From: Haliotis rubra
Taxonomy: Eukaryota
NCBI RefSeq assembly: GCF_003918875.1
Contig: NW_025764891.1
Location: forward strand, 9,052,001-9,116,000
DNA: 64,000 bases
Direction: 5' to 3'
The translations under genes and the position numbers were made by a program. This document shows, one piece after another, positions 622-58,701 of this stretch. The notes beneath the pieces were generated by a model. The model saw nothing but the letters and a program-made list of their open reading frames with translations, did no database searches and was not told the DNA's origin. The first letter of the stretch is position 1, and each line of letters opens with the position of its first letter.

Positions 622-3600
622 CTGGTTCACTTTCAGCAGTCCACGTTTCATAGAAAATCCCAGTCTTGTTGTCCCACAGTGTCCACTGTGCAAATTCGTT
701 GAACATTTGACCTGGTACAGACAGAAAGAATACGTTTACTAACGGATTAATTCGCCCTGAAGATCAGGGTTTGAATGGGCCTTCAGAAACCCAAACTTGT
801 CGTAAGAGGCGACAGTTTGTTCTTTTGTTGATTAACGCTACAGTCGGCAATATTCCAGCTGTATGACAGCTGTCATAATAATCGAGTCTGGACCAGGCAA
901 TCCAGTGATCGATATCATGAGCATATCGGCACAACTGGGATACGATGCCATGTGTCAACACAGTCAGCAAGCTTGACCACCCGATCCCATTAGTCGCCTC
1001 TTACGACAAGCATGAGTTGCTGAAGACCAAGTCTAATTAGCACGGATCTTCACGGGCAACTAACGGATCAGGTGGTTAGGCTCTTTCATTTGAAAAGTGG
1101 GGCGGTGAGGTAGCCTATAGTGGTTAAAGCGTTCACTCGTCACGCCGAAGACCCGTGTTCAATTCCCCCAAATGGGTTTACATTTGTGAAGGCCCCCGCC
1201 GTGATATTGATTTAATAACGCTAAAAAGCGGCGTAAAGCCATACTCACTCACTCACTTATTGGAAAAGTCGAGGCATTTATTTGTAATAGTGGTAAGACA
1301 GGTTTTCCAAGTCTTCCATGCCCGATAAGAAACATATTGTACTCATTCTTCAAAACCTCTGATGTACCCGAGGAAGTACTGACATGCTCCTCATGTCAAC
1401 GCCGACAAAAATGTAAATCGGATGGACAAGCAGTGGACATATCTTGCGTATTATCATATTTCACCCTGCCTGTGATATAACGACTGCGGCGTTTAACAAC
1501 ATCCCTTCACTCACTCTCCATGCAGGGGCGGTGGGGTAGCCTAGTGGTTAAAGCGTGCGCTCGTCACGCCGAAGACCCGGGTTCGATTCCCTACATGGGT
1601 TAAATGTGTGAAGCCCATTTCTGGTGTCCCACGCCGTGATATTGCTGGGATATTGCTGAAAGCGGTGTAAAACCATACTCACTCACACTCCCCCTGCTTG
1701 CATACCGGTTATGTCGGCCACCTTGACCAAGGTGCCGTTTTGCGACCAGTGGATGTCGTCAATGCCGTCGTATATGCAGGTGGCGCCCTGGTTGCACCAT
1801 TCCAAGGTGTTGTTGGGCAGAACGTGGGCGAAGGTGCAGTTGAACAGCTGGAACAGCTCGTACCACTCCATGGTGTAGTTGAGGCCGGTGTTGAGGTTCT
1901 TGAACCCAAGGGCGTCGTGCATGATATGCTGAAGCAGATGTTAAGTCCATTGCTGCACTATTAGTAACACTCATAGACCTCACAAATCCTATATATGGGA
2001 TAGTACTAAGTGCAAACCTAATACTTTTTTATCGAATGAGTCCGTTCCTAGATTCAAACCCAACTCTCAGAGAGGTAGAGAACTGGAAGACCTAATCGCG
2101 TTGAGTCACAAAGCCTCTGAGAAGTGCAAAGACGCTAACTGTGCTAGTGATTAGGTGGCGCACTCTGAGAGTACGGGTTCCCAAGGGGGAATGATGTCTC
2201 AGTAGCATTATTATTGACAATTAACATATATAATTAGAACTTTAGAAAACTACCCTGATGTTATATTTGATTCAAATAATTATTTTGAAATATAGTACAT
2301 GTCTCTGTAACATTGTTATTGACAATTAACGTATACAAATAACATGATAGAAAACTGCACTGAAGTGATATTGATTCAAACCATCATTTTGCAAAATACT
2401 ATACAAAAGATTTATATAACATAGACAAAAACACACAAAACACGCTTACAACGTTTTGCCCAACCGGCACGTTTTCAAAATATCTTCAGGATGAATAGAC
2501 TAACGCTTAGTCACTGAATATATATCATTTTAATAGAAACAAATGGTTCCTTTTAAACTGAAAAGGAGCCCCAGTGAGATGGGAGACCCTAAGGAATTAT
2601 AGACTTGCTCCATTTAAGGCTTTAGCATTACAGAAAGAGCTGGGCGGACTAAGGGAGACAGGCTACAGAACGCAAAGTTGACTTAGTGCCCATTACATTA
2701 AAATGATGCATTGTACTTACAAACTTGGCAAGCAGGTCACCAAACTTGAACTCCCAGACTGGGGCCTTCAGAGCATACACCTCTATCACGTCAGTGGCCT
2801 GAAAGGTCGGCATGGTGTTGGCTTCTCGCCCTGTGGGACAGAATGGGATCACCCCAGCCTGGCAGTAAGGGTTTGTTGGGGGTCGGGACGTAAACCGCCT
2901 GAAAAACCATATATGTACCCTTAGAACACTGAGATCTTGTATCTTCTCTAAAAAGGAGTGAGTGAGTTTAGTTTTACGCCGCTTTAGCAATATTCCAGCA
3001 ACACAACGGCGGGGGACACAAGAAATGGGCTTCGGGTTTTCAACGCGATGAGCGGACGCTTAAACCATTAAGCTACCTCATTGTCTCTATCCAAATACGA
3101 GGAACGCATGCTATTACAAAGTTGTTAGATTGCACATATTTTCTTTCTGATGCATATATTGATGCTCATTCTGTTGATCACTGGATTGTCTGGTCCAGAC
3201 TCGAGTTTTACAGACCTCCGCCATAAAGCTGTCATATTGCTGTGTGCGGCGTTAAACAACAAACCAACGAGCCAACCACTCACTATTTGATGGTTGGTTG
3301 GTTTTGTTGTTTAACGCTGCTCTCAGCAATGTTCCCGCTATATGAAGGCGATCTGTAAATAATCGAGTCTGGACCAGACAATCCAGTGATCAACAGTATG
3401 AACGTCGATCTACGCAATTGGGATACGATGACATATGTTGACCAAGTCAGCGAGCCTGACAAGTATGAGTTACTGAAGATTAATTCTAGCCCGGATACAA
3501 AATTGTTAAGCGTCCAAAATCATTTACCAAAATCATTTGTTTCAGGGACAAAACTCACATTCATGAATTGGGGCGGTGAGGTATCCTAAAATGTTAAAGC

Positions 3601-6879: not shown

Positions 6880-9800
6880 TTATGGGAAATAGAGAGCTAG
6901 TTGTATAATGCTAAAAAACGGTTTAACAAGAGGTGCAAACCAATATTCGGAGTTGATATGAATGTATAAACCTCCGTGAGTTTCGGCATAAGTCTGCGCA
7001 ATTAGCATATTTGTCGCCGAATTGAATCCACCAAATGTGTTGTTAAATAGGCGGTAGTAGTCAGTGATGTTCTTGGCCAACGATTCATCCCGCCCCGAGC
7101 CGAAGATTACCGAAGAGTTTCCGAGAAACGTCGGTTCTGGTCCTCGGCTGGCCATCATTGTGTAGTTTGCCTTGGCGCCCTTCACGAATGTCACTCCTAT
7201 ATCCGCCATTGCGTGGTAGGTTCTGTTTATGAAACTACCACAGTCGTTGGAACGAAACCAGAATGTTGAACCTTTAAATAGTACAATGATGTCTGACATT
7301 TTGTCCCAGAAATAACGTTATCTTATTATGAAATATAAACATCTAGAAAACAAAGCCAAATGGAGCCCCGAACAATCCCTAATCTAAGGAGGCAATCTAT
7401 ACTTGCCAAATCATGCTAGACTTGAGTATGACTCCTGTTTAATACATTCTCTAGTGTCTGGGAAACAAACTAGCCTCCAGCAGGATCAGTGATTCACTTG
7501 ATGTCTGGCATGATATGTATTAATTGCATAGATCGATGCTATTGTCAGAAATTGAAGGTCTGGTCCACTCCATAATTTACAGCAAACACACAGCTGGAAT
7601 ATCCGAACCCGGGTCTTCGGCGTGATGAGCGAACGCTTCAACCACTAGGCTAACCCACCGCCCCGGAATATTGCTGATTGAGGACATACCAAAGAAACTT
7701 TGTACGAGACTTGACATCACTTTAGTGTATTAACAGGAGTAATCACCGTGTATTAGATCTATACCCAAAGAACTTATTTAAGCACCACTGATATAGCGCA
7801 CGATTGAATGAGCCCAGATCTTAACCCTTTGGAACATATATGGGACATGACAACAAAGGGATCCTTCTGTACCGAACCTGGCCCAACTGGAAGCTGCTTT
7901 ACACGAGGAATGGCGTATACTGCCCTTTCGGAGGAACAGAAGGCGGGGTATGAGGAGGAGAGTCATATAGTCACATGGAGATTACACTCGGTATTGACCT
8001 TAAATCGTGTAAGACAAGCAAAATGAGCAACATTAAACATTCCAGGGTCATACTTGTACAGACATGATTTTGTATGAAAATCGGTGTTTTTCAAAACGAG
8101 CAATTATCAGACAGGGGGTGCTTAATTAAATTCTTTGTGTATATATTATGAATGAGCATACAAAGATTCTACCGAAAGCCACCCATGCCTGATTTTCGAG
8201 AAGATCCTTACCTGAAGTGTCAAGGATAGTGCTGCCTCCACAGTCAATGTTTGTATCATTTTCATGCTGTAACCAGCCAGCATACTTGTTAAACTGGTTC
8301 CCTGAAACGACCAATAACATTTGACAGTAATTTTCCAGGATAACGATCAGTGAAGATCCGGATTTGAGTTGTTTTCAGCAACCCATGCTTGTCGTTAGAA
8401 GCGACTAACGTGTGGTCAGGCTCGCTGACTTGGTTGGCACATGTCATCGTATTCCAATTGCGTATCTGTTCCTACCAGTCATGTTTGCTGTGACTGACTG
8501 ACTGAGTTTGGTTTTACGCCGGTTTTAGCAATATTCCAGCAATATCACGGCGGCGGACACCAGAAATGGGCTTCACTCATTGTACCCTTGTGGGCATGTT
8601 TGCTATGAGAGACATCTGTCACTTCTATCTGTTCTTACCTGTCCTGTTTGTTATGAGAGACATCTGTCACTTCTATCTAGCCCTACCTGTCCTGTTTGTT
8701 ATGAGAGACATCTGTCACTTCTATCTAGCCCTACCTGTCATGCTTGCTATGAGAGACATCTGTCACTGCTATCTGTTCCTACCTGTCATGTTTGCTATGA
8801 GAGACGTATGTCACTTCTATCTGTTCCTACCTGTCACGTTTACTATGAGAGACATATGTCACTTCTATCTATCCCTACCTGTCATGTTTGCCATGACAGA
8901 CATCTGTCACTTCTATCTGTTCCTACCTGTCTTGTTTCGCTATGAGAGACATCTGTCACTACTATCTGTTCCTACCTGTCATGTTTGCTATGAGAGACAT
9001 CTGTCACTTCTATCTGTTCCTACCTGTCATGTTTACTATGAGAGACATCTGTCACTACTATCTGTTCCTACCTGTCATGTTTGCTATGAGAGACATCTGT
9101 CCGTTGTTCTCGGGCAGGAACTTGTCGCTTATTGCATCAGTGACGCAGAAGCCGCCTTGATTGCACCAGAGAAGACTGTCGTCTTCGAGCACTCTCGCGA
9201 ATGAACATTGACTGATGAGGTACAAACCGTACCAGTCAACGGTGTAGTTGGTGTTGGTGTTGACGTTACGGAAACCTACGGCCACGTGCTTCGGAAACTG
9301 CCAAAGACAAAATATGCAATTTTTCATTTATTCAAGCGGAACAGTTTAACATATCTTCAGTTTTGCTTTTGATAACATGGATAGAACGCCCACCCACCAG
9401 CAATGTCGCAGTGGGGTTTAAAATGATTATTTAATATTATATTGGGGGCACTAAAATGGGTTTATGTATGGGGAATTGAACGCGGATCCCCTTTAGGGAT
9501 ACAGCCGAATCCGACACATTTACCAGTCCAAAGATGGGACACATTAAAAAACCCACACTATTTGTTAATCCTCAAAATGTATGTAGATCCTAAACACTTT
9601 CCTTGTCCCATACTTTTGAAGCGTCAAGGTCTAAGCATGCTCACTACCTAATCAAATATCAGCCGTTTCCCTAGTGTTTAATCTAACCCAAATTTAACAC
9701 TGGTATTCTTACATCAGGCAAATGTAGGCTTGGCGTCAGATCGGAATACATATGGAACAGTTCCACTCGGTCATTATCGGAGAACCTCGGCATACTGATA

Positions 9801-10385
9801 CCATTTGCACAGAATGGTGGGTTGGGCTTCTCACATCTCGGATCTAACGGTGGCCGGTGAGACACTCGCCTGCAACACAGAGTGAGTGAGTGAGTGAGTG
9901 AGTGAGTGAGTGAGTGAGTGAGTGGGTGCTCTTTCAACAGTAGGCCTATTTCATTCAGAGAAATCACGAATATAATCCTGATGTTGTGCAGACAAACATG
10001 GGGTCATATTAGGGAAATAGATGTAATTCGAATGAGTAAGTTTAGTTTTCCGCCGCTTTTTTCAATATTCCCGCAATATCACGGCGGCGATGTAATTCGA
10101 ACCTTCATTACTGAATCATTGTATATTAGGGACACTCCTGTCCAAAACATGTTTTACTTGTTAAGGAAACATTTCTATACCTAAATTTTACATTTTGGAT
10201 AGAAGGGCGCCGTCCTGGCCGATGACGATAAGCTGGATAATTGCTAAGTGTTTTCGTTACACCACAAATATACAACAGAACGGCTAAAATTTCACTTACC
10301 GATGCTCAACTGGCCACTTGCGTTGTTGGGAATATACTTGTGACAGACAGATGATTGTGAGGATACCAAATATCATTGAGGACAT
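6880..10385 (-). CDS. CLN5-like paralogue copy 2, complete, 5 exons, 316 aa
   Basis: Exons 10385-10300, 9869-9713, 9297-9072, 8301-8212 and 7271-6880 total 951 nt with no internal stop and the same intron phases (2,0,1,1) as copy 1. Signal peptide MSSMIFGILTIICLSQVYS; motifs KWPVEHR, KHVAVGF..NYTVDWY, WCNQGGFC, WFRSNDCGSF, EPTFLGN, INSEYWFAP. Confidence 0.92.
7790..8130 (+). mobile_element. Tc1/mariner transposase 3' remnant
   Basis: SPDLNPLEHIWD motif (third acidic residue of the Tc1 DD34E triad) at about 7811-7846; frameshifted afterwards. Confidence 0.75.
8595..9100. repeat. 48-bp minisatellite (about 10 copies) made from the copy 2 exon 3/intron 3 junction
   Basis: Unit ATGAGAGACATCTGTCACTTCTATCTGTTCCTACCTGTCATGTTTGCT; the last unit overlaps exon 3. 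Confidence 0.92.
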
Positions 10386-28494: not shown

Positions 28495-31400
28495 CTACTC
28501 GTACCCTGGTAACGGGACTACCATTTGGGTAAGCGTGTCTGGAGCTCGGGATGTAAACTTCGCATACCAGTAAGCTTCATTGTAATACATGTACAAATAG
28601 TCAATATCTTTGTCGCCCCATGTCTTGAAGAACGAGATCAGCCTCTGGGCCAAGACTGGGTCTCCGTCAACGCCGAATATCTCCGTGTGGTTGCCCAGGT
28701 ATTCAGGCATATATGTGTAGGCGATGGCCAGGTCGTAGGTTGGTTGAAAGTCGGGATAGAATCTCACGCCGAGATCATAAAGGGCTTGAAATGCCCGCTG
28801 AACAAAGCTGCCACAGTCCCAGGACTCCGTCCAGTAGGGACCATCTGGAATGAAGTGTTGGTCTGTTTAGTATCACGCCCCAGAAAACATCCATTTTAGT
28901 GTTTTCATAGAGTCTGTTTAATGTATGAGGTATCGCTAAGGTTTAAGACGTAGATGTTGATAAAGTCTGTTGAGAGAATAAGGGTTCTGGCGAATAATGT
29001 CCCGACGTATAACTAGCTCAGACAATTAAGTTGAAGTATAATACAATGTGATTTTTCAGACTTGTACAGCAACGACCATTTAGTGGAAAATAGTACATTT
29101 AATTACTTGTGTTTTACACATCCTACAACTATATTTTATGCAGTGATTCCTGCGGCTCTCGGGGGCGGTGGTGTAAGCTAGTGGTTAAAGCGTTCGCTCG
29201 TCACGCCGAAGATCCGGGTTCGACTCCCCATATGGGTGCACTGTGTGAGGCGCATTTCTGATGTTGTCCGCCCTGATATTGCTAAAATATTGCAAAAAGC
29301 GGCGTAAAACTATAACCCACGTAGACATGGGACTCTCCGATATAACTCCGAAGAGAATCGCAGTAGGCTTTTCCAGGCGGACCACGTGATCAGTCCACCG
29401 GCGAGGGGCTTGGAGAACCATAGTCTTGTTCGTTACTTTAGTCTGCTATCTGATGCCCATATAGTAAGGTGTTGTTGTATGCTAATTTGGCCCCTCACCA
29501 TTATCTATATCTCCTGGACTCGCGTTTCTGTAAACTTACAATAACCCCTGGATCCACTCCGTGGTTCTGGAGATCCGTGAAGATCCGGGTTAGAAATAAT
29601 CTTCAGCAGCCCATGCTTGTCGTAAGAGGCGACTAACGGGATCGGGTGGTCAGGCTCACTGACTAGGTTGACACATGTCATCGTATCTTAATTGCGTAGA
29701 TCGATGTTCATGCAGTTAATCCCTGGATTGTCTGGTCCAGACTCGATTATTTACAGACCGCCGCCATATAGCTGGAACATTGCTGAGTGCGGTGTTAGAC
29801 AACAAACCAACCAAACCAAAACGTAGTTCTTGCGATCGTACATTATCCACTGCTGATGTTAATTTTCAGTTAAAGCAATTTGCAGAAAATGCAAGGACAA
29901 CACGTCAGTTAAGGTAACGCGTATTACCAAGAAAACCAAGACAGCGCTTGTCTTAATGGACATGATGATGACATGTATCTGATATATATGAAAGTAAGAA
30001 TCACCAGGAATTATGTAGTCAAGAACAGAATCGGAATCAAGGCGCTTCAAATACTTTCTCACAGAAATTCAACCCCTGATGGTAGAGGATGCCCCCCAAC
30101 TTACCTCTGGAACGCATCAGATGTGCCGTGTCGCCATAGATACCAGTACTGTTGTCCCACGTGACCCAGTGTGAGAAAGCATTGAGGAGTTTGCCTGAAA
30201 CGATATTTCTATTAGAAAATAAATAGAATGAGATATTAAGTAGAAAATAAGTGAATATATTATGCTTCAACACTAACACAATCGGATCATTCGGAACTAA
30301 CAAACAATTCTCTGGGAAGTAACATTTCATGCTGTATGCGCAATTTGACTTTTTTCTGAGCAAATGAATCTTGGTGAATCTTGTGGACCTACCGGTTGTC
30401 TTCGCCACCGGATGGCGTACTGCTTTTGGCCCTTGGAAGAAGCTGCTGAAGTTGGAACTGAAGCACGATGCGCCCTGGTTACACCAGAGGAACGAATCAT
30501 CTTCCAGCACCGCGGGTCGGGAGCAGTTTATGATGCTGAACATATGGGCCCAGTCCAAGGTGTAGTAGAAGCCAGTGTTGAGGTTGTGCAGGCCAATGCC
30601 GGCGTGATGCGGCATCTAAAGTGAATTAGCGAAAACGTGAGTTGGTTTGGTTTCATACTCAGATGTCTGCGTTTGCTGAGGTTGGTTTGCTGTTCTCAAC
30701 AATAGTCCAGCTATATGGCAGCGTTCTGTTCTTTTGCAAATCCTGCTATCTACCGAAATCTGCAGGGATGCCGAAATCTAAAGGACAGTTTAATTACCAA
30801 GCAAATGTTGATTTCTGAAGGGGGCTTTGCTTAGACTGCATAGACTCGGGAAGATGGGTGACACATTCACTACATATTGTAATCACATGACCCGACGTTT
30901 TCAGCCGCTGCTCAAATACTTCTTTGCGCGAAGGAGGGGTCAAACAATTTCTCTTTGGACCCACAACACATTAGTTTTTAATTCTTCAACACTTTGCTGA
31001 ACACTTTACCCCGTGAATATAAAACGGCCTCCCACAACTTTCTCCCGGAAAGGGGATCGTGGTTTTACCTGGTGTTGGGTGCTTACGCAGAAGAATTGAT
31101 CTTCAGTAACCCTTGCTTGTCGTAAGAGGCGACTAACGGAATCGGGTGGTCGATGCTCATGATGTTGATCACTGAATTGTCTGGTCCAGACTCGATTATT
31201 TACAGACCGCCGCCATAAAGCTGGAATATTACTGACTGCGGCATAAAACTAAACTCACTCACTCACTTATGCAGAAGAGCTGTTAAATATACATATGTGG
31301 TGTTCATACATCCTTCACAGATTGGGTACAAGGTGTGAATCCCAGTTCTGGTGTCCCCCACCGTGATGTTGCTGGAATATTGCTAAAAGCGGCGTAAAAC

Positions 31401-32591
31401 CAAACTCAGTCAGTCAGTCAGTCAGTCCTTCACAGATGTTCTATAGATAGATGACGTTTAGGCGCTGGACACATCGGATCTGTTCTGTTTCTCTTGGTGA
31501 TGCATTTCTGTCTCCAATCGGAATTAATATGGTACCTATTCTCACCACTTTGTCGATAGATGGAACGCGTCTTCCACTTCCCCTCATGCTGTAGATCACT
31601 ATGGTGTCGTCGTCATCAAAAGTCACCATCGGCACTCCGTCGGAACAGAAGTGTTTGTCCTGTGGGTTTTTACAGCGAGGATCCACTGGTGGTCTACTTT
31701 TAAAGCGTCTGGAAATATTAAAAAAGTGAACATGGTTAAAAAGGTTTGTTTGCGTGTTATTTATTACCGCACTAAGCAATATACCAGTGTTGTGATGGAG
31801 TCCTGTAAATATATTCGTATATATCTTTGACGCGTCAAAGAAACAGTCGATCCTTTTCAGTGTGGACACCGTTAGTCCTCGTTCCAAGCCGATGTAGGAC
31901 GTGCAGAGTTACTCATTAACAATGATTCGAGAATCCGATAAATATGTTTTGACAGACCAGTCGACGCACCCCTGTTTAGATGCCACATTCCCATGAGCCC
32001 ATGTTCTTGCATAACAAAGCATGACCTACAAACGACTAAAGTGGTCCTCGGTAATTCGGTTAGAAGTAACTGAACTGTTGAAACGTTGACGTAACGTGTG
32101 TGTCGTATGTTGTATATGTTGTACATATTATGCATATTTATTTTGCATATGGGCCTATGTCCTTCATGAACTAAACTGATTGATTGATCAGGAGAATTTA
32201 CAGTGAATTGTACCGTTCGGAATAGCGAAATAGTAAATAGTTTCATCTTAAAGTTCTAAACAAGCGAAGAAGATAACACTCTACTATAACAATGGTTTGA
32301 AAAGAAAACTTTCTACTCCCGACACCGATTATACATCCCGGCACCGTGTCTTTAGCTTTGGCGGTACTCCCCTACTCCCTTGGAAATTAGCTCTCCAGGG
32401 AAATCCGAAATATACATTTTAGCCTTCCCGGGACAACGAAAAAATAAATTTTAGCCTTCCCGGCACGACACCTTTCAGAACAACGACTCATGTTTATCTC
32501 ACCTATGTGGCATAACATAGTCAAAACTCCCAGCCTCGACTGTCGTCCAAATGATTCCATGAGAAAACAGTATCAGAGCTGTCAGCAACAT
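28495..32591 (-). CDS. CLN5-like paralogue copy 3, complete, 5 exons, 304 aa
   Basis: Exons 32591-32503 (MLLTALILFSHGIIWTTVEAGSFDYVMPHR, signal peptide), 31708-31546, 30615-30393, 30194-30105 and 28844-28495 total 915 nt, open frame. Motifs HHAGIG..YTLDW, WCNQGASC, WDNSTGIY, WTESWDCGSF, PEYLGNHTEIFG, YYNEAYW. Confidence 0.9.
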
Positions 32592-38594: not shown

Positions 38595-41500
38595 CTACTC
38601 ATATCCTGGTAAGGGAACTATCATTTTGGTAAGCGCGTCTGGAGGTTGGGATGTCAGCTTAGCATGCCAATACGCTTCATTGAAATACAGATACATATGG
38701 TGATGGTCTTTCTGGCGCAAATGCTTGAAATACGAAATCAGCCTCTGGGCCAAGACTGGGTCTCCATCAGCGCCGAATATCTCCGTGTGGTTGCCCAGAT
38801 ATTCAGGCCTATGTGTGTAGGCGATGGCCAGATCGTAGGTTGGTTGAAAGTCGGGATAGAATCTCACGCCGAGATCATAGAGTGCTTGAAATGCCCGCTG
38901 AACAAAGCTGCCACAGGTCCAGGTGTCCGTCCAGTAGGGGCCATCTAGAATGAAATGTAGGTGTGATTAGTGCCATGTCCAATAAAAACACATAGTTTGG
39001 TTTTTTATTACGTCGCACTCAGCAACATTCCAGCTCCTTTGCAGCAGTCAGTAAATAATGAAGTCTGGACCAGAAAACCCAGTGATAAACAGCATGAACA
39101 TCGATCTACGCAATTTGGATACGATGACATGTGCCAACCAAGTCAGCAAGCCTGACCACCCGATTCCGTTAGTGGTCTCTACGACAAGCATGGGTTACTG
39201 AAGACCAATTCTAACCCGGATTTTCACGGGTCAGCTCATCTGTGAATCGTGGTAGGTCATGCAAATCGATTTTAAAGGGCATACTTTTGCGTATTGTACT
39301 CGCCATCTGATTGGTTATACCTAGTAGCGTAGCTAATCAAATTGACAAACAGAAATCAAATAAAGGTAACTTGAGATTGTTAGAACCACGTGAATGGATC
39401 TACGGCTTAGAGTAGGATGATGCTCACCTCTGGAACGCATCAGATATGCCGTGTCGCCATAGATACCAGTATTGTTGTCCCACGTGACCCAGTGGGAGAA
39501 AGCACTGATGATTTTGCCTGAAAAGATGTTTCCATTAAAACATTAATCAGGTGAGATAATGAAAAGAATATAACTGGACTTATTCCACCCCTTCACTCAC
39601 TCATTTTCAGGCAGAAAACCAACACATATTGGCACATTATTTATAAGCAATACATCCTTACCTGAGAATATAGTATTTACCACTTCCTCAGTGGTGATGA
39701 AGACCACGTCATTCGTCAGTTATCGCCAAAACCCGGAGAGTTAATATGCTGATGAGGGTCAGGTAACAGAGGTACCATAAGTCACCATAATGGTGATCTA
39801 CGTTAAGTTGATGGCTATCTGAAGCCTTTTTCTGTTTTGAATAGTGCAGTCGCAGTTATGACCTTTTAATGTCCTAATGCTAGTGTATATATATCAACTT
39901 TACGAAGATCACCATAATGGTGACTTTGGGGACTTATGGTGCCTCTGTTTGATTGCGATCTGTTTGGTTGTAACATAATGGTGATCTACGTTAAGTTGAT
40001 TGCTATCTGAAGCCTTTTTCTGTTTTGAATAGTGCAGTCGCAGTTATGACCTTTTAATGTCCTTATGCTAGTGTATATATATCAACTTAACGATGATCAC
40101 CATAATGGTGACTTTGGGGAATTATGGTGCCTCTGTTTGATTGCGATATGTTTGGTTGTAACATAATGGTGATCTACGTTAAGTTGATTGCTATCTGAAG
40201 CCTTTTTCTGTTTTGAATAGTGCAGTCGCAATTATGACCTTTTAATGTCCTTATGCTAGTGTATATATATCAACTTAACGAAGATCACCATAATGGTTAC
40301 TTTGGGGACTTATGGTGCCTCTGTTTGATTGTGATCTGTTTGGTTGGCACCATAATGGTGAGTTGAGAGGAAGGTGATTACTTAATGGATGACGTCTTCT
40401 GTATCATATTATGATGTCACTTTTCAGTAAAAGGTCGTATATCTCACTAAGGCGGCTGTGATGGTCTAGTTACAGACATAATCGTAGTTTCTCGCAGTGC
40501 CTCATTAACTAAGCAGGTATGGGTGACAGTATCGGCGCTATGGTGAATCTCATGGACCTACCAGTTGTCTTCGCCACCGGGTGGCGCTCTGTTCCTGGTC
40601 CCCGGAAGTAGCCGGTAAAGTTGTTACTGAAACACGACGCGCCTTGGTTACACCAGAGCAACGAATCATCCTCCAGCACCGTGGGTCGGCTCCAGTTCAG
40701 AACGCCGAACAGAGGGGACCAGTCCAAGGTGTAGTTGAAGCCAGTGTTGAGGTTGTGCAGGCCCATGCCGGCGTGATGAGGCATCTAAAGTGAATTAGCG
40801 AGTAAGTGTGTGAGTTGGTTTGGTTTCAAACCGTGCTTAGATCAGTGTGTGTTATCTGAACAGGATAGATTGGCCACTGTCAATCATGTGTAGCATCTGG
40901 GTACAGTGCTTTCCCCGATACAAGGTGGTTTACTGGCAATAGAATACCAGTTTGTATCCGTGTCGAACTTTTCGAATTTCGTGTTCGTTCGTAGCGCCAC
41001 CAATGGCGCGTTGCTACTTATGCCCCTTTTATGTCCTTCCTATTAACAACTCAGATTTCACCTGTCATGTTACTTGCATATTGGTCTAACAAAATGGCGG
41101 CTCCCAGTCAAGACGGTCCGATCGAAAATCAAGATCTACAGACTGTATATTGTAATGAAACGCGTATTACTTTGCGAAGTGCATCAACTTACTTTAGCAC
41201 CTTGATTAAAAACATGAAAAATGGGAAAATATCTGTCGACACCTCGTTGACGGGATTCATGTTTTGCAAATCGTGAGGATGTTCAGGGGTCGCGTGTGCC
41301 TATGAGTGAGTGAGTTTTAGTTTTACGCCGCACCCAGCAATATTCCAGCTATACCGGGGCGGGCTTAGGATAGAGTCGACTAACCAATAGTTGCTATCAC
41401 CGATGAGTAACATCTGGATACAGAATTGGTGGTTCGATCGGCCCTTCTTTGTCCTTCCTACTGACCAATCAGATTTCACTTATCATAGTACTTGTATTTG

Positions 41501-43986
41501 CTTCCAACAAATGACGGTCTTGATGTATATTGGAATGAAACGAGTATTACCTTGCTAAGTGCATCAAATAATGTCAACACCTTGATTAATAACATGAACA
41601 AAATGACAAAATATCTGTCGACGTCCATTTGACGGGGCAAATGTTTTCCAATTCTGCTATCAACCGAAATCTGCAGGGATGTCTATTTCGTTTGGTGGCT
41701 TAGCTTGGACTATGCATAGACCCGTTAATCCAGCCAGAACATAACTTTCATGAAGGTCAAGCGAAATTCGGCAATGGTGGAAGATGGACTTCCCCTTGCC
41801 TCGGGAAGATGGGTGACACACTATCGGTGAATATTGTAAACGTCTGGCTCAACGTTTTCAATCGTTTACATAGTGTCGGGTTAAGCGTGAGTGAGTGAGT
41901 TTTACGCCGCACTCAGCAATATTCCAGCTGCATGGAGGCGGTCTGTAAATAATCGAGTCTGGACCAGACAATCCAGTGATCAACAGCATGAGCATCGATC
42001 TTCGCAATTGGGAACCGATGACATGTGTCAACCAAGTCAGCGATCCTGACCACCCGATCCCGATCGCCTTTTATGACAAGCATGGGTTGCTGAAGACCAA
42101 TTCCACCCCGGATCTTCACGGGTGGTGGGGTAAGAAGAGACGGGAGGTGTACATGCGAGCTAAGTGTCATTGAGTATACCCCCTTTACAGAGGCTGTATA
42201 GACACAGGACGTTTAGGCGCTGGACACTCAGAATCTGTCCTGTTTTTTTGTGGATGATGTAATACTGTCCCCAAAACTATTTGCAAGAGGGTTAATCAAC
42301 AATTAATGCAGTGTTCTCACCATTCTGTCGGTGCCTGGGGTATGGCTTCCACTTCCACTCATGCTGTAGATCACTATGATGTCGTCGTCATCAAACGTCG
42401 CCATCGGCTCTCCGCCGAAACAGAAGTGTTTTCCCTGTGCATTTTGACAGCGAGGATCCGATTGTGGTCTGCTTTCAAAGCGTCTGGAAATATTGAACCT
42501 GCATCAGCATGGTCAAGAGGTTTGTTTACTTAAGTATTATTTTATCAGTAAATTATCGAGTCAATCGAAAACTCTTTCGGGGTTATATCATCACTATTAC
42601 TGGCCACCTGATCAGTAATGGTTTCTGGTGACCTGTATTGTAACCCGGATGTTTAACAGGATGAGGGTGGGTTTATAGGTAGGGCTTGGACGACAAAATA
42701 AAGGACCGTTCATAATTTATGGCTTAGGTGTGTGTGTGTGTGTGCGCGTGCGTGCGAGCGTGCGTGCGTGCGTGTGTTGTTGGTGAACGGTCCCTAAGAT
42801 ACTTATAAAATAATCGATTCCCTTCTGTTGATTAGTAAGTCCGATGACCTCCTATTTCATGAGGCAAATAATATATATATTAATAATCACGGATAACCCA
42901 AGCTGCTTGTGAGGTGCCAGAGGGTTAATAGTCACATGACATTTCCCACCTGGTACCTATTTTCTGCTGGGTGAACAGAGGCAATTTTGAACAAACTCAC
43001 TTGCCTAAGGTGAGACCATATGTATCACACGTGCTGTTGTAGGGCAGAACTGAAGTTCCAAGAAACTCTTAGGAGTCAAGCTGCCAATGGTCACCCATCC
43101 AAGAATTCTCCGCGCCCAACGATGCTTATCTTCAACTGATTTGTGAATTTGTGAGAGAGGAGTACTATTTGATAAAAGTCTATTGCAACGAGTTGTTTAA
43201 AATATACGACTGAAGCAAGACAAAAGTAACATTTTTTGTTACCCACCCTAAACTCAGGCCTTCAAATGTATGGATACTTAGCCTAATATCCTTATGGCAG
43301 TAGCGCTTGAATACATAAAACAAAGTTCTTGAATGACATCACCCAGCTTCCTGCTTAATACTGATACGTACTGCGACTACCACAAAAAGATTTCAGACAT
43401 GTCTGTAAATTGGCAAGGCAATGATGATAGTAATGGTGGAAACTAGACATGGTAGGTAGGTCAGGACACTTAGCGAAACCTTAGTACTTCCGGTGACAAA
43501 CTACGTTTCATACCTTTTGGAATGGTCTCATGGTTGCCATGTTTGTCGCAAACATGTCCAAGTAACAGTAAAACCTCGTTATCGTGGACATGGTTCGTCC
43601 TCGTTTTCAGGACGATATAGGACATACAGAATTACTGTTTAACTCGAAAATATGTCTTTGATAGCCCAGTCGAAACACCCCTGTGTGAGATGACACATCC
43701 GAGCATGAACCCAGTTCTTCCATAACAAAACAGGACACACAAACACCACCACTGGACTGGTTCCCGGTAATCCGGTTATCCGAAACATGAAAGTGAACGT
43801 AAACGCTGATCGGGACAATTTACAGTGAACTGTACTGTTCGGAAGAACGCGGTTTCATTGCAAACTGTTTTAGAACAACGACTCATGTTTATCTCACCTG
43901 TGTGGTATAACATAGTCAAAACTCCCAGCCTCGGCTGTCGTCCAAAAGATTTCATGAGAAAACAGTATCAGAGCTGTCAGCAACAT
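38595..43986 (-). CDS. CLN5-like paralogue copy 4, complete, 5 exons, 304 aa
   Basis: Exons 43986-43898, 42483-42321, 40784-40562, 39517-39428 and 38944-38595. Sizes (89,163,223,90,350) are identical to copy 3; frame is open; catalytic His, Asp and Cys (WTDTWTCGSF) are retained. Confidence 0.9.
39765..40345. repeat. 188-bp hairpin-like unit in three tandem copies (intron 3 of copy 4)
   Basis: CATAATGGTGATCTACG at 39786, 39974 and 40162; each unit has inverted ends. Confidence 0.88.
42895..43140 (-). mobile_element. Degenerate 5S-rRNA-derived (SINE3-like) element with a CORE-like body
   Basis: Minus strand GAAGATAAGCATCGTTGGGCGCGG...CTTGGATGGGTGACC resembles the 5S internal promoter (A and C boxes), followed by CCTTAGGCAAGT...TGCCTCTGTTCACCCAGCAGAAAATAGGTACC (CORE-like). 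Confidence 0.6.
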
Positions 43987-51380: not shown

Positions 51381-54300
51381 ATGACTGACATTGATGTGCA
51401 CGTGTGTTATGCTGTGTTGCATGTTCGTGTCTACAATTCTGTGCCAACCGTCCGACCCGTTCAGTAGCTTCACAGGGCGGTGAGGTAGCCTGGTAATTAA
51501 AGCGTTCGCTCGTCACGCCGAAGACTCGGGTTCGATTCCCCACATAGGTACAATGTGTGGAGCCCACTTCCGGGGTCCCCCGCCGTGATATTGCTGGAAT
51601 ATTGCTAAAAGCGGCGTGAAACCATACTCACTCACTCACCCAGTCGCTTCACAGGACAAGTACACCTGGGGACGGCAGTGGCACACCATATGAAGACACT
51701 AATTAGGAACAATACGTACAGATATCCAATCAAAGTATTTATTTGTGTATTTGGAACGAGAAAATCCAAACTTGTCAATTTATTGTCTGGGAAATGCCCT
51801 TGATATTAAAACATTTCAATACACAGACGAAGTGACGGCCATTTGATCCAATGCAAGAAGGAGGGTGGAGAGTCGGGCAAGTTCATGTTGGGATACATAA
51901 CTACTGTTCCCTGTTGATGATCCCCGATTTCATTTGGCAATGTAAATGGCAATGGCATAGGAAATCGCCCGGTTTATCCTCACGGTGATGTCTCGGGTTG
52001 TTTCTTTAAGTGGAATTAGAAACTGGTTTGACGAAGAAGAGCAAATTTTATGGATTGAAAATCAACAAGAACATACGTGAAGGATACATGCGTTTATACA
52101 ATTGAGTGTGATTACATTGGTTCTGGATGTTGCGCATCCCTCATTTGAAAACGGTGGCAGCATCTGTGCAGTTCTCAATCCATGAAACCTGTCATTCTCC
52201 CGCTTATTAGTTCAGGAACATCAATATATTTTGCAACAACTCCTCTCCCCCAAAGACAGCAAACAAACCCAAAATAAACAAACAAAACAAAAACAAACGT
52301 CCCTCCCACCACAACCCCTCCCCAAAATAACAAAACAAAATAAACAACAAAACAAAAAACAAAAGAAAACCCCAAAATAAACAAAAAAAACCAAACAAGC
52401 AAAAACAAACAAACAAGCAAAAAAAAAACCTCCAAAACGAACTAAAAAATAACCCACAAACTCCAAACATAACAAACCCAAACAAACCCACAAAAAAATC
52501 TGTTACTGCTGCCACATGAACCTCATCCCCTGTTAAATGGTCTACTCGTACCCTGGTAACGGAACTACCATTTGGGTAAGCGTGTCTGGAGCTCGGGTTG
52601 TTAACTTCGCATACCAGTAAGCTTCATTGTAATACATGTACAAATGGTCAATATCTTTGTTGCCCCATGTCTTGAAGAACGAGATCAGCCTCTGGGCCAA
52701 GACTGGGTCTCCGTCAACGCCGAATATCTCCGTGTGGTTGCCCAGGTATTCAGGCATATATGTGTAGGCGATGGCCAGGTCGTAGGTTGGTTGAAAGTCG
52801 GGATAGAATCTCACGCCGAGATCATAGAGTGCTTGAAATGCCCGCTGAACAAAGCTGCCACAGGTCCAGGTGTCCGTCCAGTAGGGACCATCTGGAATGA
52901 AATGAATATGAGTGTGATTTAAACCCTTTAAAACATATACTGAAGTTTTTCACAGTCAGTAAGAGGCGACGTTAAGGTCGGAAATCTTATAGTTGATAGA
53001 ACTGGGTGGTCGATTATCAAGGGAATATGTGACTTTAAACTGACCAACGACTTAGCGTAAGGTTGAGAAAAGGTCAGGAATATGTGACTCCAACCAACGA
53101 CTAGTGGAGAAAAGGTCAAGAAAAGCCACTGAAAGAAAAATCAGTGGAGTGTATTACTCAGTGCAGATAAGAAATACTTACACTTCTCAGAGAGGTATAC
53201 AAAGTACGTGATCGAAACATTTTGTGAAAGATCTGTGGCTGAGTGGGTTAGATCGCTGTGCTTGCGATTTGGTGCCTCACACTGAGAGTGTGAGTTCGAA
53301 TCCCGGATGGGTCTCAACCCCAAAAGTATTAATCCCAAATATAACGCATTTTGCATTTAAAGATGAACTTCATGAACCTGCATTATTGCTGTGTTCTACA
53401 ACAAACAAAGAGACGGCAATAGTACTAGAATATGTACTTTTCTGAGAAAGTGATATATTTGACCACTTTCTAAATGGCATTCTGTATTCATTCAACAACT
53501 ACATTATATGAAGATTTACGTCTTTGTCCTGAGTTGGAAAAAAACAAATAAAAGGGAGAAGGCAAGGATGTGTCTCTTAGTACCAAATAAACGAAGCCAC
53601 TGACAATTTTAAAAGTCATGAAAACATCCTCTCCATCAATACGCTGTTTGAGGGCATTCTTTTGTGTGTCAGTCATTTTTTCAATCTTGAATTTCTCTCA
53701 AACTCGTCCGTTATGAATGGGACTGGCTGCCATGCTGAGGATGGTTTAACAAACACACTAGCGTAACCAATCAGATTGACAAACATACATCAAGGGTGTA
53801 TAATTTAAGATTGCGACAACCATGGACATATATCCATGGCTTAGGGTAGGTTCACGGAAATGCCACCCCGGATGATAGAGAATGCTCCCCAACTCACCCC
53901 TGGAACGCATCAGATGTACCGAGCCGCCATAGATACCAGTATTGTTGTCCCACGTAACCCAGTCAGAGAAAGCATTGATGATTTTGCCTGAAAAGATGTT
54001 TCCCTTTAAGTATTTTTAATTGGATAAGATAAAAATAACAGGAAATAACTGAATGTATAATACTTCCGAATTACTGCCCATCGTTGACCGGATTTATATA
54101 TTATCTCTGTGGAACATTGCCATGGATTGGTGTATACAAATTTACCATAGTTTCTCGCAGTGCCGCATTAGCTATTTAGGTATTGGTGACAATGGTGAAT
54201 CTTGTGGACCTACCGGTTGTCTTCGCCACTGGATGACGTTCTGCTGGTAGACCCTGGAAGAAACTGTTGAAACTGTCACTGAAGCATGACGCGCCTTGGT

Positions 54301-55269
54301 TACACCAGAGGAACGAATCATCCTCCAGCACCGTAGGTCAGGAGCAGTTTAAGATACCGAACATAGCGTACCAGTCCAAGGTGTAGTTGAAGCCAGTGTT
54401 GAGGTTGTAAAGGCCAATGGCGGCGTGATGAGGCATCTGAAGTGAATTAGCGAGTGTGTGAGTTGGTTTGGTTTTTACACTCAGATGTCTGCTGTCCTAT
54501 ACCTGGGCATTGAGCAGAAAAAAAGACGGTCATTTTGATTTTTTTAAGATGCACCTGGGTGACCTAGGTAAACATCTGGATGACCTTATTATGTATACGT
54601 AGGTGTGTGGTTTCATACTCTGCGTGTGCTAAAGTCGACTAACAGTTGTTATCACCGATGAGTAACGACTGGATATGGAATTTCGTGGTTCTATCTGCAC
54701 TGGTTATTTATGGCCCTTATTTGTCCTTCCTATTGACCAGTCAGATTTCATCGATCATATTACTTGCATTTGCTTCCAACAGAAGTGTTTGAGTTGATTT
54801 GGTTTCATACTCAGAGATTTTTGTGTGCTTAGGATGGAGTCGATGAGTGACGCCTGGATAGTGTGTCACATATCCTCCCGAAACAAAATAACATACAAGT
54901 TTCCACCATTGCAGAACTAGGCTGTAAATCCGTGGCTTAATGGTAGCGCCACCAGTGGCATGTGGCTAGTTATATCATTTCTTTGTCCTTCCTATTGGCC
55001 AATCAGATTTTCCCTATCATATTACTTGCATTAACTACCAACATAATGGCTGCTCCCAGTCAAGAGGAAATGATAAAAAATAAGATATAATATTGTATTG
55101 AAACGGGCATTACCTCTTCAAGTGTCTCATTATTACTTCAGCATCTTTCCTCTAGTAAATACCTATTGACGCTCGTTTGACGTTACACGTATGTTGTATT
55201 TATTGCAATCAACCCAGATATATATATTTATTTCGGGTACTGAAAGGCCACAGGCCTGTAGCACAACAC

Positions 55270-56980
55270 ATTTATAAATCAATATTTACACGCACATTGT
55301 AATATACAAGTAGAAGAGAAAATAATCAACTGTAGGTTACATTGTGTTCTGAGATATATTCTGTCCTAAACAACATGGGTTAGTAAGCAAACATGGACAA
55401 GTTTTGAAGTATAGTATGGTTTTTGTTATTTAACAATGCTGAAAATTTATAAAGGTTTGGATGGGCACAATAATATTTCTTAATATACAACTTTCTCAGG
55501 GAATTATAAGCAGGGCAAATTAAAAGAAAATGATATTCATATTCTATTTGGTTAATAACACATAATTTGCAAGTTCTATTTTCATTTTTGACATTTTTAA
55601 ATCTTCCACTTTCGATAAATAAATCATGTGAAGAACATCTTAATCTGCTTAACGCTGTCCTATACTTTTTGACGTTTAGACATGAAAGATAAATTTCGGC
55701 GTCAAAAGTACATTTAAACATCTTATAATACAAACATTTACTGGAAAGTGATAACTTTTCAAACCATTCTTGCAAATAGATATCTTTTAATCTTCGTGTT
55801 AGTTCTCAAATAAACTTACCCTCAGAATCAACATACTATTCGTTCCATACAAAACCAAACCCTTTCGAGAATAGAAAATTTCTAACAGAAGAAACCCAAT
55901 TTGTGTGTCCATTTTTATCTTATACCTATAAGAAGGCATCTTCAGTAATTTTAACCAGTATTTTATAACTCTGATATTTGAAAACAAGTGCATCGGGTAT
56001 TTACCACATGTTCCATACACCATTGTATTCATCGTATTGGATTTAGCACCAAGAAATCTTTTACATGCTTTCAATTGAACTCTTTCCATATCATTGCAAT
56101 AATTCAAACCCCATATTTCGGCTCCATACAATATAATTGGCTTAAGTTTGGCATCAAATATTTTAAAGTATGAACTTATAATCTATGTCTCCAAGTACAT
56201 TTAAATGTTTAAAGATACCTATCATGACCGTTTGTGCCTGCAAACAAGCGTAATTAACATGTGCTGTCCAAGATAAACAATTACTGAAGAACATTCCCAA
56301 ATATTTGTACGAACTGGTGCATTCTAATTCTTTACCTTTATACAACTGTTTCTCGTTTTTTCATAAACGTTCCCCTTTTTTAAAAGCTACTACTTTAGTT
56401 TTATTTCTATTTACAGTTAATTTTTATTTGTCACAATAACTCTCAAGTTCTTGTATAAGTCTTTGTAAACCTGCAACAGTGCTTGAGAATAGCACGATAT
56501 CGTCTGCAAAAAAGCAGAAGAAAAATATGTACTAGGTCAGGGTGTAACTGTATTCCATACTCACAATTGCTTTCAATTTGGGTTGCTAATTCATTTATGA
56601 AAAAGGAGAATAAAATGGGCTAAGTATGCAGCCTTGTCTTACCCCGAGTTGTAGTTCAAAGGAATCTGAGAATTCATTGTTATTCTTAACACAAGCTTTA
56701 ACATTTTCATACATATTCTGAATAATTTTTTTCATTTTAGGACTTAGACCATGGGTATTAAAAATAGGCCATAGCTTTTGTCTGTCAACTGAATCAAATG
56801 CATTTTCGAAATCAACGAAGAGTGTATAGAGTTTACCACCTTTGGTGTTGAGGTATCTCTGTATAAATACTTTGTAATATAAACATATTGTCAGTAGTCG
56901 TATATCCATGTCTAAATCCTAACTTGGATTCATTTATTTTATTCAATGCCTCTCCCCAAGTTACTAATCTTCTAATCAGC
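55270..56980 (-). mobile_element. 5'-truncated degenerate LINE (RTE-X-like) in intron 2 of copy 5
   Basis: FVDFENAFDSVDR, GVRQGCILSP, FADDIV, YKYLG, YGAEIWG and the C-terminal RCSSHDLFIESGR...CKLC...EYHFLLICPAY; multiple frameshifts. The clade call is from motif recall. Confidence 0.85.
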
Positions 56981-57411
56981 CCAGATGTGCAGGACAGTTT
57001 ACGAACCGGATTGTCGAATTCGTTACATGTGTCAACCCAAACATGACTACCATTCCAGCTAAATTCAGGTACCTCCCGTTTCTCGAGAAGATGTGTGACA
57101 CACTATTAGTGCATATTTAATCATCTGACCCAAAGTATTCAGTCAATGCTCAAATATTCTTTTTCCCCGAAGAAGGAGCCAAACAGTTTTTCCTTGGACC
57201 CAGAACACATTATGTATATTTTATTGTCTTGCTGAAACATAGGGACAGAGAGAAATTTTCGACCACTTTAAGGAACACATAACCTCTGAAATTTCAAACA
57301 GCCGGCCCTTGGAACAAGATACATGTAGATGGTGCGGACAGACAAGGAACTGAGGTATATTTACGAGATGGTTAGTGTTCATGCATGGGTTGTAAATATG
57401 TTTCACATATA

Positions 57412-57657
57412 ACCCGTGAAGATCCGGGTTAGAATTGGTCTTCAGAAACCCATGCGTGTCGTAAGAGGCGACTAACAGGATCGGGTGGTCAGGCTCTCTG
57501 ACTTAGTTGACACATGTCATCGGTTCCCAATTGCGCGGATCGATGCTCATGCTGTTGATCACTGGATTGTCTGGTCCAGACTCGATTATTTACAGACCGC
57601 CGCCATATAGCTTGAATATTGCTGAGCGCGGCGTAAAACTAAAATCACTCACTCACT
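57412..57657 (+). mobile_element. Family B SINE-like element in intron 2 of copy 5
   Basis: Full length, TSD TTTCACATAT. Confidence 0.88.
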
Positions 57658-58382: not shown

Positions 58383-58627
58383 GACCCGTAAAGGTCCAGG
58401 CTAGAATTGGTCTTCAGTAACCCACTTGTCGTAAGAGGCGACTAACGGGATCGGGTGGTCAGGCCCGCTGACTTGGTTGACACATGTCATCGCATCCCAA
58501 TTGTGTAGATCGATGCTCATGTTGTTGATCACTGGATTGTCTGGTCCAGACGTGATTATTTACAGACCGCCGCCATATAGCTGGAATATTTTTGAGAGCG
58601 GCGTAAAACTAAACTCACTCACTCACT
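58383..58627 (+). mobile_element. Family B SINE-like element in intron 1 of copy 5
   Basis: Full length, TSD ATCGCAGC. Confidence 0.85.
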
Positions 58628-58701
58628 ATCGCAGCTGCGCAGTAATACTTAACACAGCGGTGACATCATCGGACTGCCTGCTCACTACGCATGTTAAGGG
58701 T

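What the first reader, a model, noticed from the sequence alone, without database searches (positions are those of the whole stretch)
28560..28660. Copies 3-5 lack about 18 aa of the C-terminal amphipathic membrane-binding helix
Seen: between the LISFF/ITDYY helix and LY(M/I)(Y/H)(Y/I)N, copy 2 has 28 aa (RLFNNTFGGFNSATNMLIAQTYAETHGG), the same length I recall for human ([28 protein letters not shown]). Copies 3-5 have only 10 polar residues (KTWGDKDIDY, KHLRQKDHHH, KTWGNKDIDH). Known: this region of human CLN5 is an amphipathic helix that mediates membrane association. Inference: copies 3-5 are soluble, perhaps secreted, and act on non-membrane substrates.
Basis: partly seen in the sequence, partly recalled or inferred. 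Interest (0 to 1): 0.72.

Follow-up and report, generated by a model that had tools for sequence, protein, structure and literature searches.

The report
Abalone CLN5 paralogs missing one helix
Three tandem abalone copies of the lysosomal lipid enzyme CLN5 lack one whole surface helix yet are still predicted to keep the CLN5 fold, a lineage-specific variant; nothing here shows that the loss makes them soluble or secreted.

Summary
The window is Haliotis rubra and carries five CLN5 (PF15014) genes on the minus strand. Copies 3, 4 and 5 have a 9-residue polar loop (c3 28623-28597) where copy 2, human CLN5 and every other retrieved relative have 20-32 residues.

Four alignment methods and two AlphaFold2 models place the gap in the same spot. 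It removes one complete helix (human 353-368) and part of the loop before it.

Among 124 family proteins, only Haliotis proteins have the short linker: clade A in four species, and clade B 0.9 Mb away on the same scaffold. The two clades are sister groups, which points to one deletion event.

Copy 3 is a real gene. Its five exons translate exactly to an NCBI protein, dN/dS against the H. asinina orthologue is 0.34 (0.16 in the exon with the deletion), and its model matches the human crystal structure at TM 0.81/0.86. Copy 5 has an in-frame TGA. Copies 4 and 5 have Thr where human Asp279 sits.

Canonical CLN5 is generally regarded as soluble and is partly secreted. Its membrane anchoring is contested, and human lysosomal targeting depends on a glycan, not on this helix. 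Copy 2 keeps the length but not the amphipathic character. No RNA or protein evidence was found.

This is a new variant of a known family, of modest interest.

The parts
28495..32591 (-). Copy 3 (c3), a short-form CLN5-like gene of 5 exons: 32591-32503, 31708-31546, 30615-30393, 30194-30105, 28844-28495 (stop codon 28495-28497). It encodes 304 aa with an N-terminal signal peptide.
   Evidence: The spliced translation equals H. rubra protein P0001 (XP_046582678.1) residue for residue, with AG/GT at every junction. Pfam PF15014. AlphaFold2 mean pLDDT 87.2.
28597..28623 (-). The deletion site in c3: a 9-residue polar loop (TWGDKDIDY) between helix 251-262 and strand 271-276.
38595..43986 (-). Copy 4 (c4). 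Homologous exons: 43986-43898, 42483-42321, 40784-40562, 39517-39428, 38944-38595. The 304-codon reading frame is open. The deletion loop is at 38723-38697. Thr (ACC, 38918-38916) replaces the Asp before the catalytic Cys.
   Evidence: The NCBI model P0003 covers only the last 214 aa.
52542..59952 (-). Copy 5 (c5). Exons: 59952-59858, 58132-57970, 54436-54214, 53987-53898, 52891-52542. There is an in-frame TGA at 54338-54340 (CGA in c3 and c4). The deletion loop is at 52670-52644. It has the same Asp-to-Thr change as c4 (52865-52863). It is probably a pseudogene in this assembly.
   Evidence: No NCBI protein for it was returned.
6880..10385 (-). Copy 2 (c2), a long-form divergent paralogue. 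Approximate exons: 10385-10296, 9871-9713, 9306-9070, 8329-8201, 7272-6880. The 28-residue segment is at 7053-6970.
   Evidence: tblastn with the H. asinina orthologue P0007. The AlphaFold2 model of P0007 has a helix at 272-286 in this segment.
640..2903 (-). Copy 1 (c1), the canonical CLN5 orthologue, only partly inside the window: exons 2-4 at 2903-2760, 1928-1704 and 712-640. The last exon is not in the window.
   Evidence: Pfam score of 130 bits on exon 3. tblastn with Mytilus CLN5. It groups with Mytilus in the tree, support 98/92.

Best explanation
An in-frame deletion of about 18 codons became fixed in a Haliotis-specific branch of the CLN5 (bis(monoacylglycero)phosphate synthase, permuted papain-like) family. 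It removed one complete alpha-helix of the C-terminal domain (human 353-368) and part of the disordered loop before it.

Shown: the flanking helix and the following beta-strands are joined directly by a short acidic loop, and the rest of the fold is predicted unchanged. The short forms have a cleavable-looking signal peptide, N-glycosylation sequons, the four disulfide cysteines and the Cys280/His166 pair. Copy 3 is under purifying selection.

Inferred: they are folded glycoproteins of the secretory/endolysosomal lumen that still form an acyl-cysteine intermediate. They probably have a changed substrate or partner surface, for three reasons: the helix is gone; the conserved third active-site residue (the Tyr258 column) is Gly; and two of the three residues lining the proposed acyl pocket that could be mapped (Ile164, Ile308) are Pro and Ala in copy 3. 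The canonical BMP-synthase role most likely stays with copy 1.

The deletion more likely trims or reshapes a surface of an already soluble enzyme than turns a membrane-anchored protein into a soluble one. Within this array, copy 3 is the intact member, copy 4 is intact but altered next to the catalytic Cys, and copy 5 is broken.
For: - Gap position.
- Structure: the P0001 model has helix 251-262, loop 263-270 and strand 271-276. The long-form P0007 model has helix 250-261, helix 272-286 and strand 288-293.
- Fold kept: Foldseek against 6r99_A gives E 1.9e-27, TM 0.81/0.86, rmsd 2.5.
- Distribution: the linker is 6-9 aa only in Haliotis short forms and 20-32 aa in every other retrieved family protein whose sequence spans the site (77 sequences, many of them members of the same clusters). 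Only 76 relatives were found in 1.84 billion representatives, and none of the short ones is from outside Haliotis.
- Tree: short A plus short B support 98/94; together with c2-like 100/98; c1 with Mytilus 98/92.
- Selection: c3 against the H. asinina orthologue gives dN/dS 0.34 overall and 0.16 in exon 5. Exon structure and the neighbouring COMM-domain gene are the same in both species.
- Residues: His, Cys and the four disulfide Cys are aligned. The Tyr258 column is Gly in short A and B and Cys in c2-like.
- Literature on solubility and secretion of canonical CLN5.
Against: No RNA or protein evidence was obtained. The runs that hold the locus are genomic DNA, and the one Logan contig is unspliced genomic sequence. 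The tools return no model coordinates, so I could not measure how close the helix lies to the active site, or whether it is buried or exposed. dN/dS among the three paralogues is about 0.5, which fits relaxed constraint. Copy 5 is broken and copies 4 and 5 carry Asp279-to-Thr; the human Asp279Asn mutant loses activity. The Tyr258 column is not Tyr, and human Tyr258Asp is inactive, so activity itself is uncertain. The signal peptide was judged by eye, not with a predictor.
Confidence: 0.6

Rival explanations
1. The helix is the membrane-binding element of CLN5. Losing it releases copies 3-5 from membranes, so they are soluble, perhaps secreted, and act on non-membrane substrates.
For: The deleted segment is amphipathic in canonical members (moment 0.4-0.7). 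It overlaps the region proposed as a membrane anchor (cited; the residue range is recalled from memory). The replacement loop is polar and acidic. The short forms have plain signal peptides.
Against: Membrane anchoring of mature CLN5 is disputed, and most CLN5 is soluble. Canonical CLN5 with the helix is itself partly secreted, and its targeting is glycan-dependent. An amphipathic pattern is also what a surface helix packed on a protein core shows. The second half of the proposed 353-392 region is beta-strand and is retained. Charge at pH 5 is not reduced. There are no localisation data.
Confidence: 0.2
2. The short forms are decaying duplicates, and the deletion is one lesion among several in genes that are losing function.
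For: c5 has an in-frame TGA. c4 and c5 have Thr at the Asp279 position. The Tyr258 column is lost. Paralogue dN/dS is about 0.5. NCBI models for c4 (P0003) and for H. asinina P0005 are incomplete. No expression evidence was found.
Against: Full-length open short forms with identical exon structure exist in H. rubra, H. asinina, H. rufescens and H. cracherodii. dN/dS against the orthologue is 0.34, and 0.16 in the exon with the deletion. The deletion is shared by two clades only about 40% identical to each other, so it is old and has been maintained. The model is confident and matches 6R99.
Confidence: 0.12
3. The gap is an artefact of alignment, annotation or assembly.
For: None found. An assembly gap (28217-28349) lies nearby.
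Against: The region sits inside one uninterrupted exon in three copies in this window and in four species. Four alignment methods and two structure models agree. The assembly gap lies downstream of the stop codon.
Confidence: 0.02

Closest known systems
Human CLN5 / BMP synthase (PDB 6R99; Pfam PF15014)
   Same: Same family and fold (phmmer E 8.9e-36; Foldseek TM 0.81/0.86). The Cys280 and His166 positions, the four disulfide cysteines and several N-glycan sequons are kept. It also enters the secretory pathway.
   Different: The short forms lack human residues about 352-369, which are the helix and half of the loop that is disordered in the crystal. The Tyr258 column is Gly, Glu183 is Asp, and Ile164 and Ile308 are Pro and Ala. 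They have a short classical signal peptide instead of the long N-terminal extension of the 407-aa human precursor, and the protein ends straight after the PLPG motif, so there is no counterpart of the C-terminal N401 glycan site.
Copy 1 of this window and Mytilus CLN5 (P0082): canonical molluscan orthologues
   Same: Same locus (c1) and same gene family. c1 exon 3 scores 130 bits against the CLN5 profile and groups with Mytilus.
   Different: Canonical members keep a 26-residue linker with a strongly amphipathic helix and the FYETW motif that contains the Tyr258 equivalent.
Copy 2 / H. asinina P0007: the long-form Haliotis-specific paralogue
   Same: It is the sister lineage of the short forms (100/98), has a signal peptide, and has also lost the Tyr258 column (Cys there).
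   Different: It keeps the helix (predicted at 272-286), but the helix has low amphipathicity (0.15-0.29).
PPPDE1/PPPDE2 (DESI) permuted papain-like thioesterases
   Same: They share the circularly permuted His-Tyr-Cys catalytic core with CLN5 (PMC9012467).
   Different: They lack the central and C-terminal domains of CLN5 altogether. No direct match was seen here.

Membership tests
CLN5 family (Pfam PF15014) | Profile match above the gathering score | tested here: met
   The last exons alone score 52-56 bits (c3-c5) and 70-84 bits (c2) against a cut-off of 27. P0001 carries PF15014.
CLN5 family (Pfam PF15014) | Three-domain CLN5 fold as in 6R99 | tested here: met
   The AlphaFold2 model (pLDDT 87.2, pTM 0.84) matches 6r99_A with TM 0.81/0.86, rmsd 2.5 A, E 1.9e-27. 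The next hit has E 0.012.
CLN5 family (Pfam PF15014) | Catalytic Cys280 and His166 | tested here: met
   Both are aligned in c3, c4 and c5, in short clade B and in c2-like.
CLN5 family (Pfam PF15014) | Third active-site residue Tyr258 | tested here: not met
   The column is Gly in short clades A and B and Cys in c2-like. Clade A keeps a Tyr one position earlier, at the human Tyr257 column. Whether that Tyr can substitute could not be tested.
CLN5 family (Pfam PF15014) | Asp279 before the catalytic Cys (the human Asp279Asn mutant is inactive) | tested here: inconclusive
   Asp (GAC) in c3 and in the other species' short forms. Thr (ACC) in c4 and c5.
CLN5 family (Pfam PF15014) | Two disulfides (human C119-C208 and C126-C214) | tested here: met
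   c3 Cys42, Cys51, Cys129 and Cys135 align to the four human cysteines. The bonds themselves were not tested.
CLN5 family (Pfam PF15014) | C-terminal-domain helix at human 353-368 | tested here: not met
   Absent in c3-c5 and in all Haliotis short forms. Present in every other retrieved family protein that spans the region.
CLN5 family (Pfam PF15014) | BMP synthase (lysophosphatidylglycerol transacylase) or thioesterase activity | not testable with these tools
   This needs an enzyme assay.
Membrane-anchored CLN5 (amphipathic-helix model of Larkin et al. 2013) | Amphipathic helix in the C-terminal region | tested here: not met
   The helical part is deleted. The retained part (human 370-392) is predicted as beta-strands. 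The 353-392 range is recalled from memory, because the paper was not held.
Membrane-anchored CLN5 (amphipathic-helix model of Larkin et al. 2013) | Tight, carbonate-resistant membrane association of the mature protein | not testable with these tools
   This is disputed even for human CLN5.

The most novel reading that the evidence does not exclude
The abalone short forms are a natural helix-deletion experiment. Removing helix 353-368 abolishes interfacial binding to lysosomal membranes and produced a new class of secreted CLN5-derived acyl hydrolases or transferases that work on soluble or dietary lipids outside lysosomes (digestive fluid, mucus or haemolymph). That would identify this helix as the membrane-docking element of BMP synthase.
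Probability: 0.12. Interest if true: 0.6.

Novelty: new variant of a known kind. Interest (0 to 1): 0.33.

Why it matters
CLN5 is the Batten-disease protein now recognised as the lysosomal BMP synthase. How it meets its membrane-embedded lipid substrates is unsettled, as is whether a C-terminal amphipathic helix anchors it.

Abalone carry conserved paralogues that lack exactly that helix, next to paralogues and an orthologue that keep it. This gives a ready-made comparison set for binding, localisation and activity assays. It also shows that the CLN5 fold is predicted to tolerate loss of the helix.

Beyond that, this is an ordinary lineage-specific gene-family expansion. The genes are already annotated as 'CLN5-like', and nothing here shows a new function.

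Tried and rejected
- RNA evidence. Both sequencing-run runs listed no run on record as RNA. The four runs laid on c3 cover introns as well as exons and show only repeat-driven joints, so they are genomic DNA of related abalone and say nothing about expression.
- The only Logan member of the short-form clusters (P0124, locus L001) has an intron acceptor upstream of exon 5, so it is genomic too.
- Word-index protein searches returned only the five Haliotis short forms. For that reason, and because the claim of lineage restriction rests on absence, I used the exhaustive representative search.
- Literature. The Larkin 2013 paper is not held. No paper links CLN5 with molluscs. No structural study of CLN5 membrane binding was found.
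- Net charge and pI as a proxy for binding anionic membranes showed no difference between short and long forms, so I dropped it as evidence either way.
- I first read the catalytic Tyr as conserved from the IYG motif. Column-by-column checking showed that this Tyr aligns to human Tyr257, not Tyr258, and I corrected the claim.
- I could not measure solvent exposure of the helix or its distance to the active site, because the structure tools return no coordinates.
- The assembly gap 28217-28349 was not filled or looked up.

Full report
**What is in the window**

The window is eukaryotic DNA. The five exons of copy 3 translate exactly to the Haliotis rubra protein XP_046582678.1 (P0001, 304 aa, named 'ceroid-lipofuscinosis neuronal protein 5-like'), with AG/GT at every junction. 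The locus is on scaffold QXJH01000001.1 of assembly GCA_003918875.1.

Five CLN5 (PF15014) genes lie on the minus strand:
- c1 is the canonical orthologue. Only exons 2-4 are inside the window; its exon 3 scores 130 bits.
- c2 is at 10385-6880.
- c3 is at 32591-28495.
- c4 is at 43986-38595.
- c5 is at 59952-52542.

**Check of the observation**

The finding's coordinates encode LISFFK, the loop TWGDKDIDY (28623-28597) and LYMYYN. Copies 4 and 5 read HLRQKDHHH and TWGNKDIDH at the same place.

For copy 3, phmmer aligns residue 261 to human 341 and residue 272 to human 370, so 10 residues face 28.

The following results put the gap in the same place:
- MAFFT L-INS-i on 25 C-terminal regions.
- An HMM alignment of all 124 family proteins collected. 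That alignment is sharply bimodal: 6-9 linker residues in the eleven Haliotis short forms, and 20-32 in every other sequence that spans the site.
- Pfam coverage: the match to the CLN5 profile ends at position 248-250 of 302 in c3-c5 but runs to 284-295 in c2.

**What was deleted**

AlphaFold2 with a 38-sequence alignment gave confident models for the short form P0001 (pLDDT 87.2, pTM 0.84) and for the H. asinina orthologue of copy 2, P0007 (pLDDT 90.2, pTM 0.85).
- P0007 has helix 250-261, a loop, helix 272-286, then strands 288-293 and 296-301.
- P0001 has helix 251-262, an 8-residue loop, then strands 271-276 and 279-285.

So the deletion removes one whole helix plus part of the loop before it and leaves the flanking elements in register.

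In the human crystal structure the first part of this stretch is disordered (six residues missing at 347). The C-terminal domain is described as three helices and a small sheet (PMC9012467).

The short-form model superposes on 6r99_A with TM 0.81/0.86 and rmsd 2.5 A (E 1.9e-27). The next PDB hit is at E 0.012.

In canonical members the deleted helix is amphipathic: the 18-residue hydrophobic moment is 0.4-0.7. The human value is 0.31 over 18 residues and 0.48 over 11. In copy 2 and its orthologue it is not amphipathic (0.15-0.29).

**Distribution and history**

The word-index search found only five Haliotis short forms. The exhaustive search of 1.84 billion representatives found 76 relatives at E <= 0.001. 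Source names show the following:
- Short forms occur in H. rubra, H. asinina, H. rufescens and H. cracherodii (clade A, which includes c3-c5).
- A second short clade B (P0006 in H. rubra, P0081 in H. asinina) is about 40% identical to clade A. It lies 0.9 Mb away on the same scaffold.
- No short form from outside Haliotis was retrieved.

A maximum-likelihood tree gives these groupings:
- c1 groups with Mytilus CLN5 (98/92).
- All other Haliotis paralogues form one clade (100/98).
- Within that clade, short A plus short B (98/94) is sister to the c2-like long form.

This fits a single deletion after the split from the c2 lineage.

**Are the short forms working genes?**

Evidence in favour:
- c3 and its syntenic H. 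asinina orthologue have the same five exon lengths and the same downstream COMM-domain neighbour. They differ with dN/dS 0.34 overall and 0.16 in the exon that carries the deletion.
- All short forms begin with a short hydrophobic leader ending in VEA/G, judged by eye.
- They keep several N-glycan sequons and the four cysteines that form the two human disulfides.
- His166 and Cys280 are conserved.

Evidence against:
- The family-wide Tyr258 column is Gly in both short clades and Cys in the c2-like proteins. Clade A keeps a Tyr one position earlier. The human Tyr258Asp mutant is inactive.
- Copies 4 and 5 have Thr (ACC) instead of the Asp before the catalytic Cys. The human Asp279Asn mutant is also inactive.
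- Copy 5 has CGA changed to TGA at 54338-54340.
- dN/dS among c3, c4 and c5 is about 0.5.
- Exon 5 of c3 and c5 is far less diverged (dS 0.04) than their N-terminal halves (dS 0.27), which suggests gene conversion.

No expression evidence could be obtained. The runs holding the locus are genomic DNA, and the one Logan contig is unspliced.

**The interpretation**

That paper is not held. Later papers cite it as proposing association with lysosomal membranes through an amphipathic helix. From memory, the proposed region is residues 353-392 of the 407-residue numbering. If so, the deletion removes its first 17 residues, and the remainder is beta-strand in both models.

The anchoring itself is disputed:
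- A review reports that Jules et al. contradicted Larkin, and calls CLN5 a soluble lysosomal glycoprotein.
- Canonical human CLN5 is partly secreted (about 17%), and its lysosomal delivery depends on a mannose-6-phosphate glycan.

So having or lacking the helix does not predict 'membrane-bound versus secreted'. Net charge at pH 5 is not lower in the short forms. The inference is possible but unsupported, and I give it about 0.2.

**Most likely mechanism**

The short forms are folded luminal glycoproteins derived from BMP synthase. They retain the Cys-His pair and therefore probably still act through an acyl-cysteine intermediate. This is inference.

Three changes argue for a changed substrate or partner surface rather than the housekeeping BMP-synthase role, which copy 1 presumably keeps:
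- The C-terminal-domain helix is lost.
- The Tyr258 column has changed.
- Two pocket positions differ: human Ile164 and Ile308 are Pro and Ala in c3 (read from the alignment; the pocket residues are named).

Whether the helix borders the acyl groove could not be checked, because no coordinates are returned.

**Comparison and novelty**

These are members of the CLN5 family by sequence and fold, but they fail two family-wide features (helix 353-368 and the Tyr258 column). The genes are already annotated as 'CLN5-like', and no paper on molluscan CLN5 was found.

I rate this a new variant of a known kind, of modest interest. It offers a natural test set for the contested helix, but no new function has been demonstrated.

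Noticed in passing
window 54338-54340 (minus strand): Copy 5 has an in-frame TGA in exon 3 where copies 3 and 4 have CGA (a CpG transition). All five of its exons and splice sites are otherwise present, so it looks like a young pseudogene or a null allele.
   Followed up: partly
window 38916-38918 and 52863-52865 (minus strand): Copies 4 and 5 have Thr (ACC) in place of the Asp directly before the catalytic Cys. Copy 3 and the short forms of three other abalone species keep Asp. The human Asp279Asn mutant at this position is pathogenic and inactive.
   Followed up: partly
window 28495-28844 versus 52542-52891: Exon 5 of copies 3 and 5 is much less diverged (dS 0.04) than the rest of the two genes (dS 0.27). 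This suggests gene conversion between tandem copies about 24 kb apart.
   Followed up: partly
c2, c3-c5 and P0006/P0081 (alignment A1, Tyr258 column): All Haliotis-specific CLN5 paralogues, long and short, have lost the family-wide Tyr258/Trp261 motif (FYETW). It reads IYGDTA, VFGQM or IDCGG instead. Copy 1 keeps it.
   Followed up: partly
proteins P0016, P0099, P0027 (lamprey and chimaera 'CLN5-like'): These vertebrate CLN5-like paralogues have Arg in place of the catalytic His and Ser in place of the catalytic Cys. They look like pseudoenzymes.
   Followed up: no
window 38595-43986: The NCBI model for copy 4 (P0003, 214 aa) starts at an internal Met. The window nevertheless holds an open 304-codon frame with a signal-peptide exon and canonical splice sites, so the annotation may be truncated.
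   Followed up: partly
window 25095-27131, 33219-35901, 36657-37515, 50490-51374, 61381-62671: Large minisatellite arrays (units of 52, 56, 119/400, 26 and 40 bp, up to 48 copies) lie between the CLN5 copies. They account for the strong GC and AT skews seen there.
   Followed up: no
window 29130-29910 and 31000-31470 (introns of copy 3): High-copy repeats, one with a tRNA-like head around 29160-29240, attract enormous contig depth in the genomic runs of related abalone. They look like SINE-type retroposons.
   Followed up: no
locus L004 23512-24097 and L002 22582-25802: A COMM-domain gene lies about 9 kb (H. rubra) and about 7 kb (H. asinina) downstream of copy 3 and of its H. asinina orthologue, on the opposite strand. 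In the window that is near 19 kb on the plus strand. The conserved synteny supports orthology.
   Followed up: partly
protein P0005 (H. asinina, 272 aa): This short-form model lacks the whole of exon 4, the segment that carries the Tyr257/258 region. It is either a skipped exon in the annotation or a real loss.
   Followed up: no
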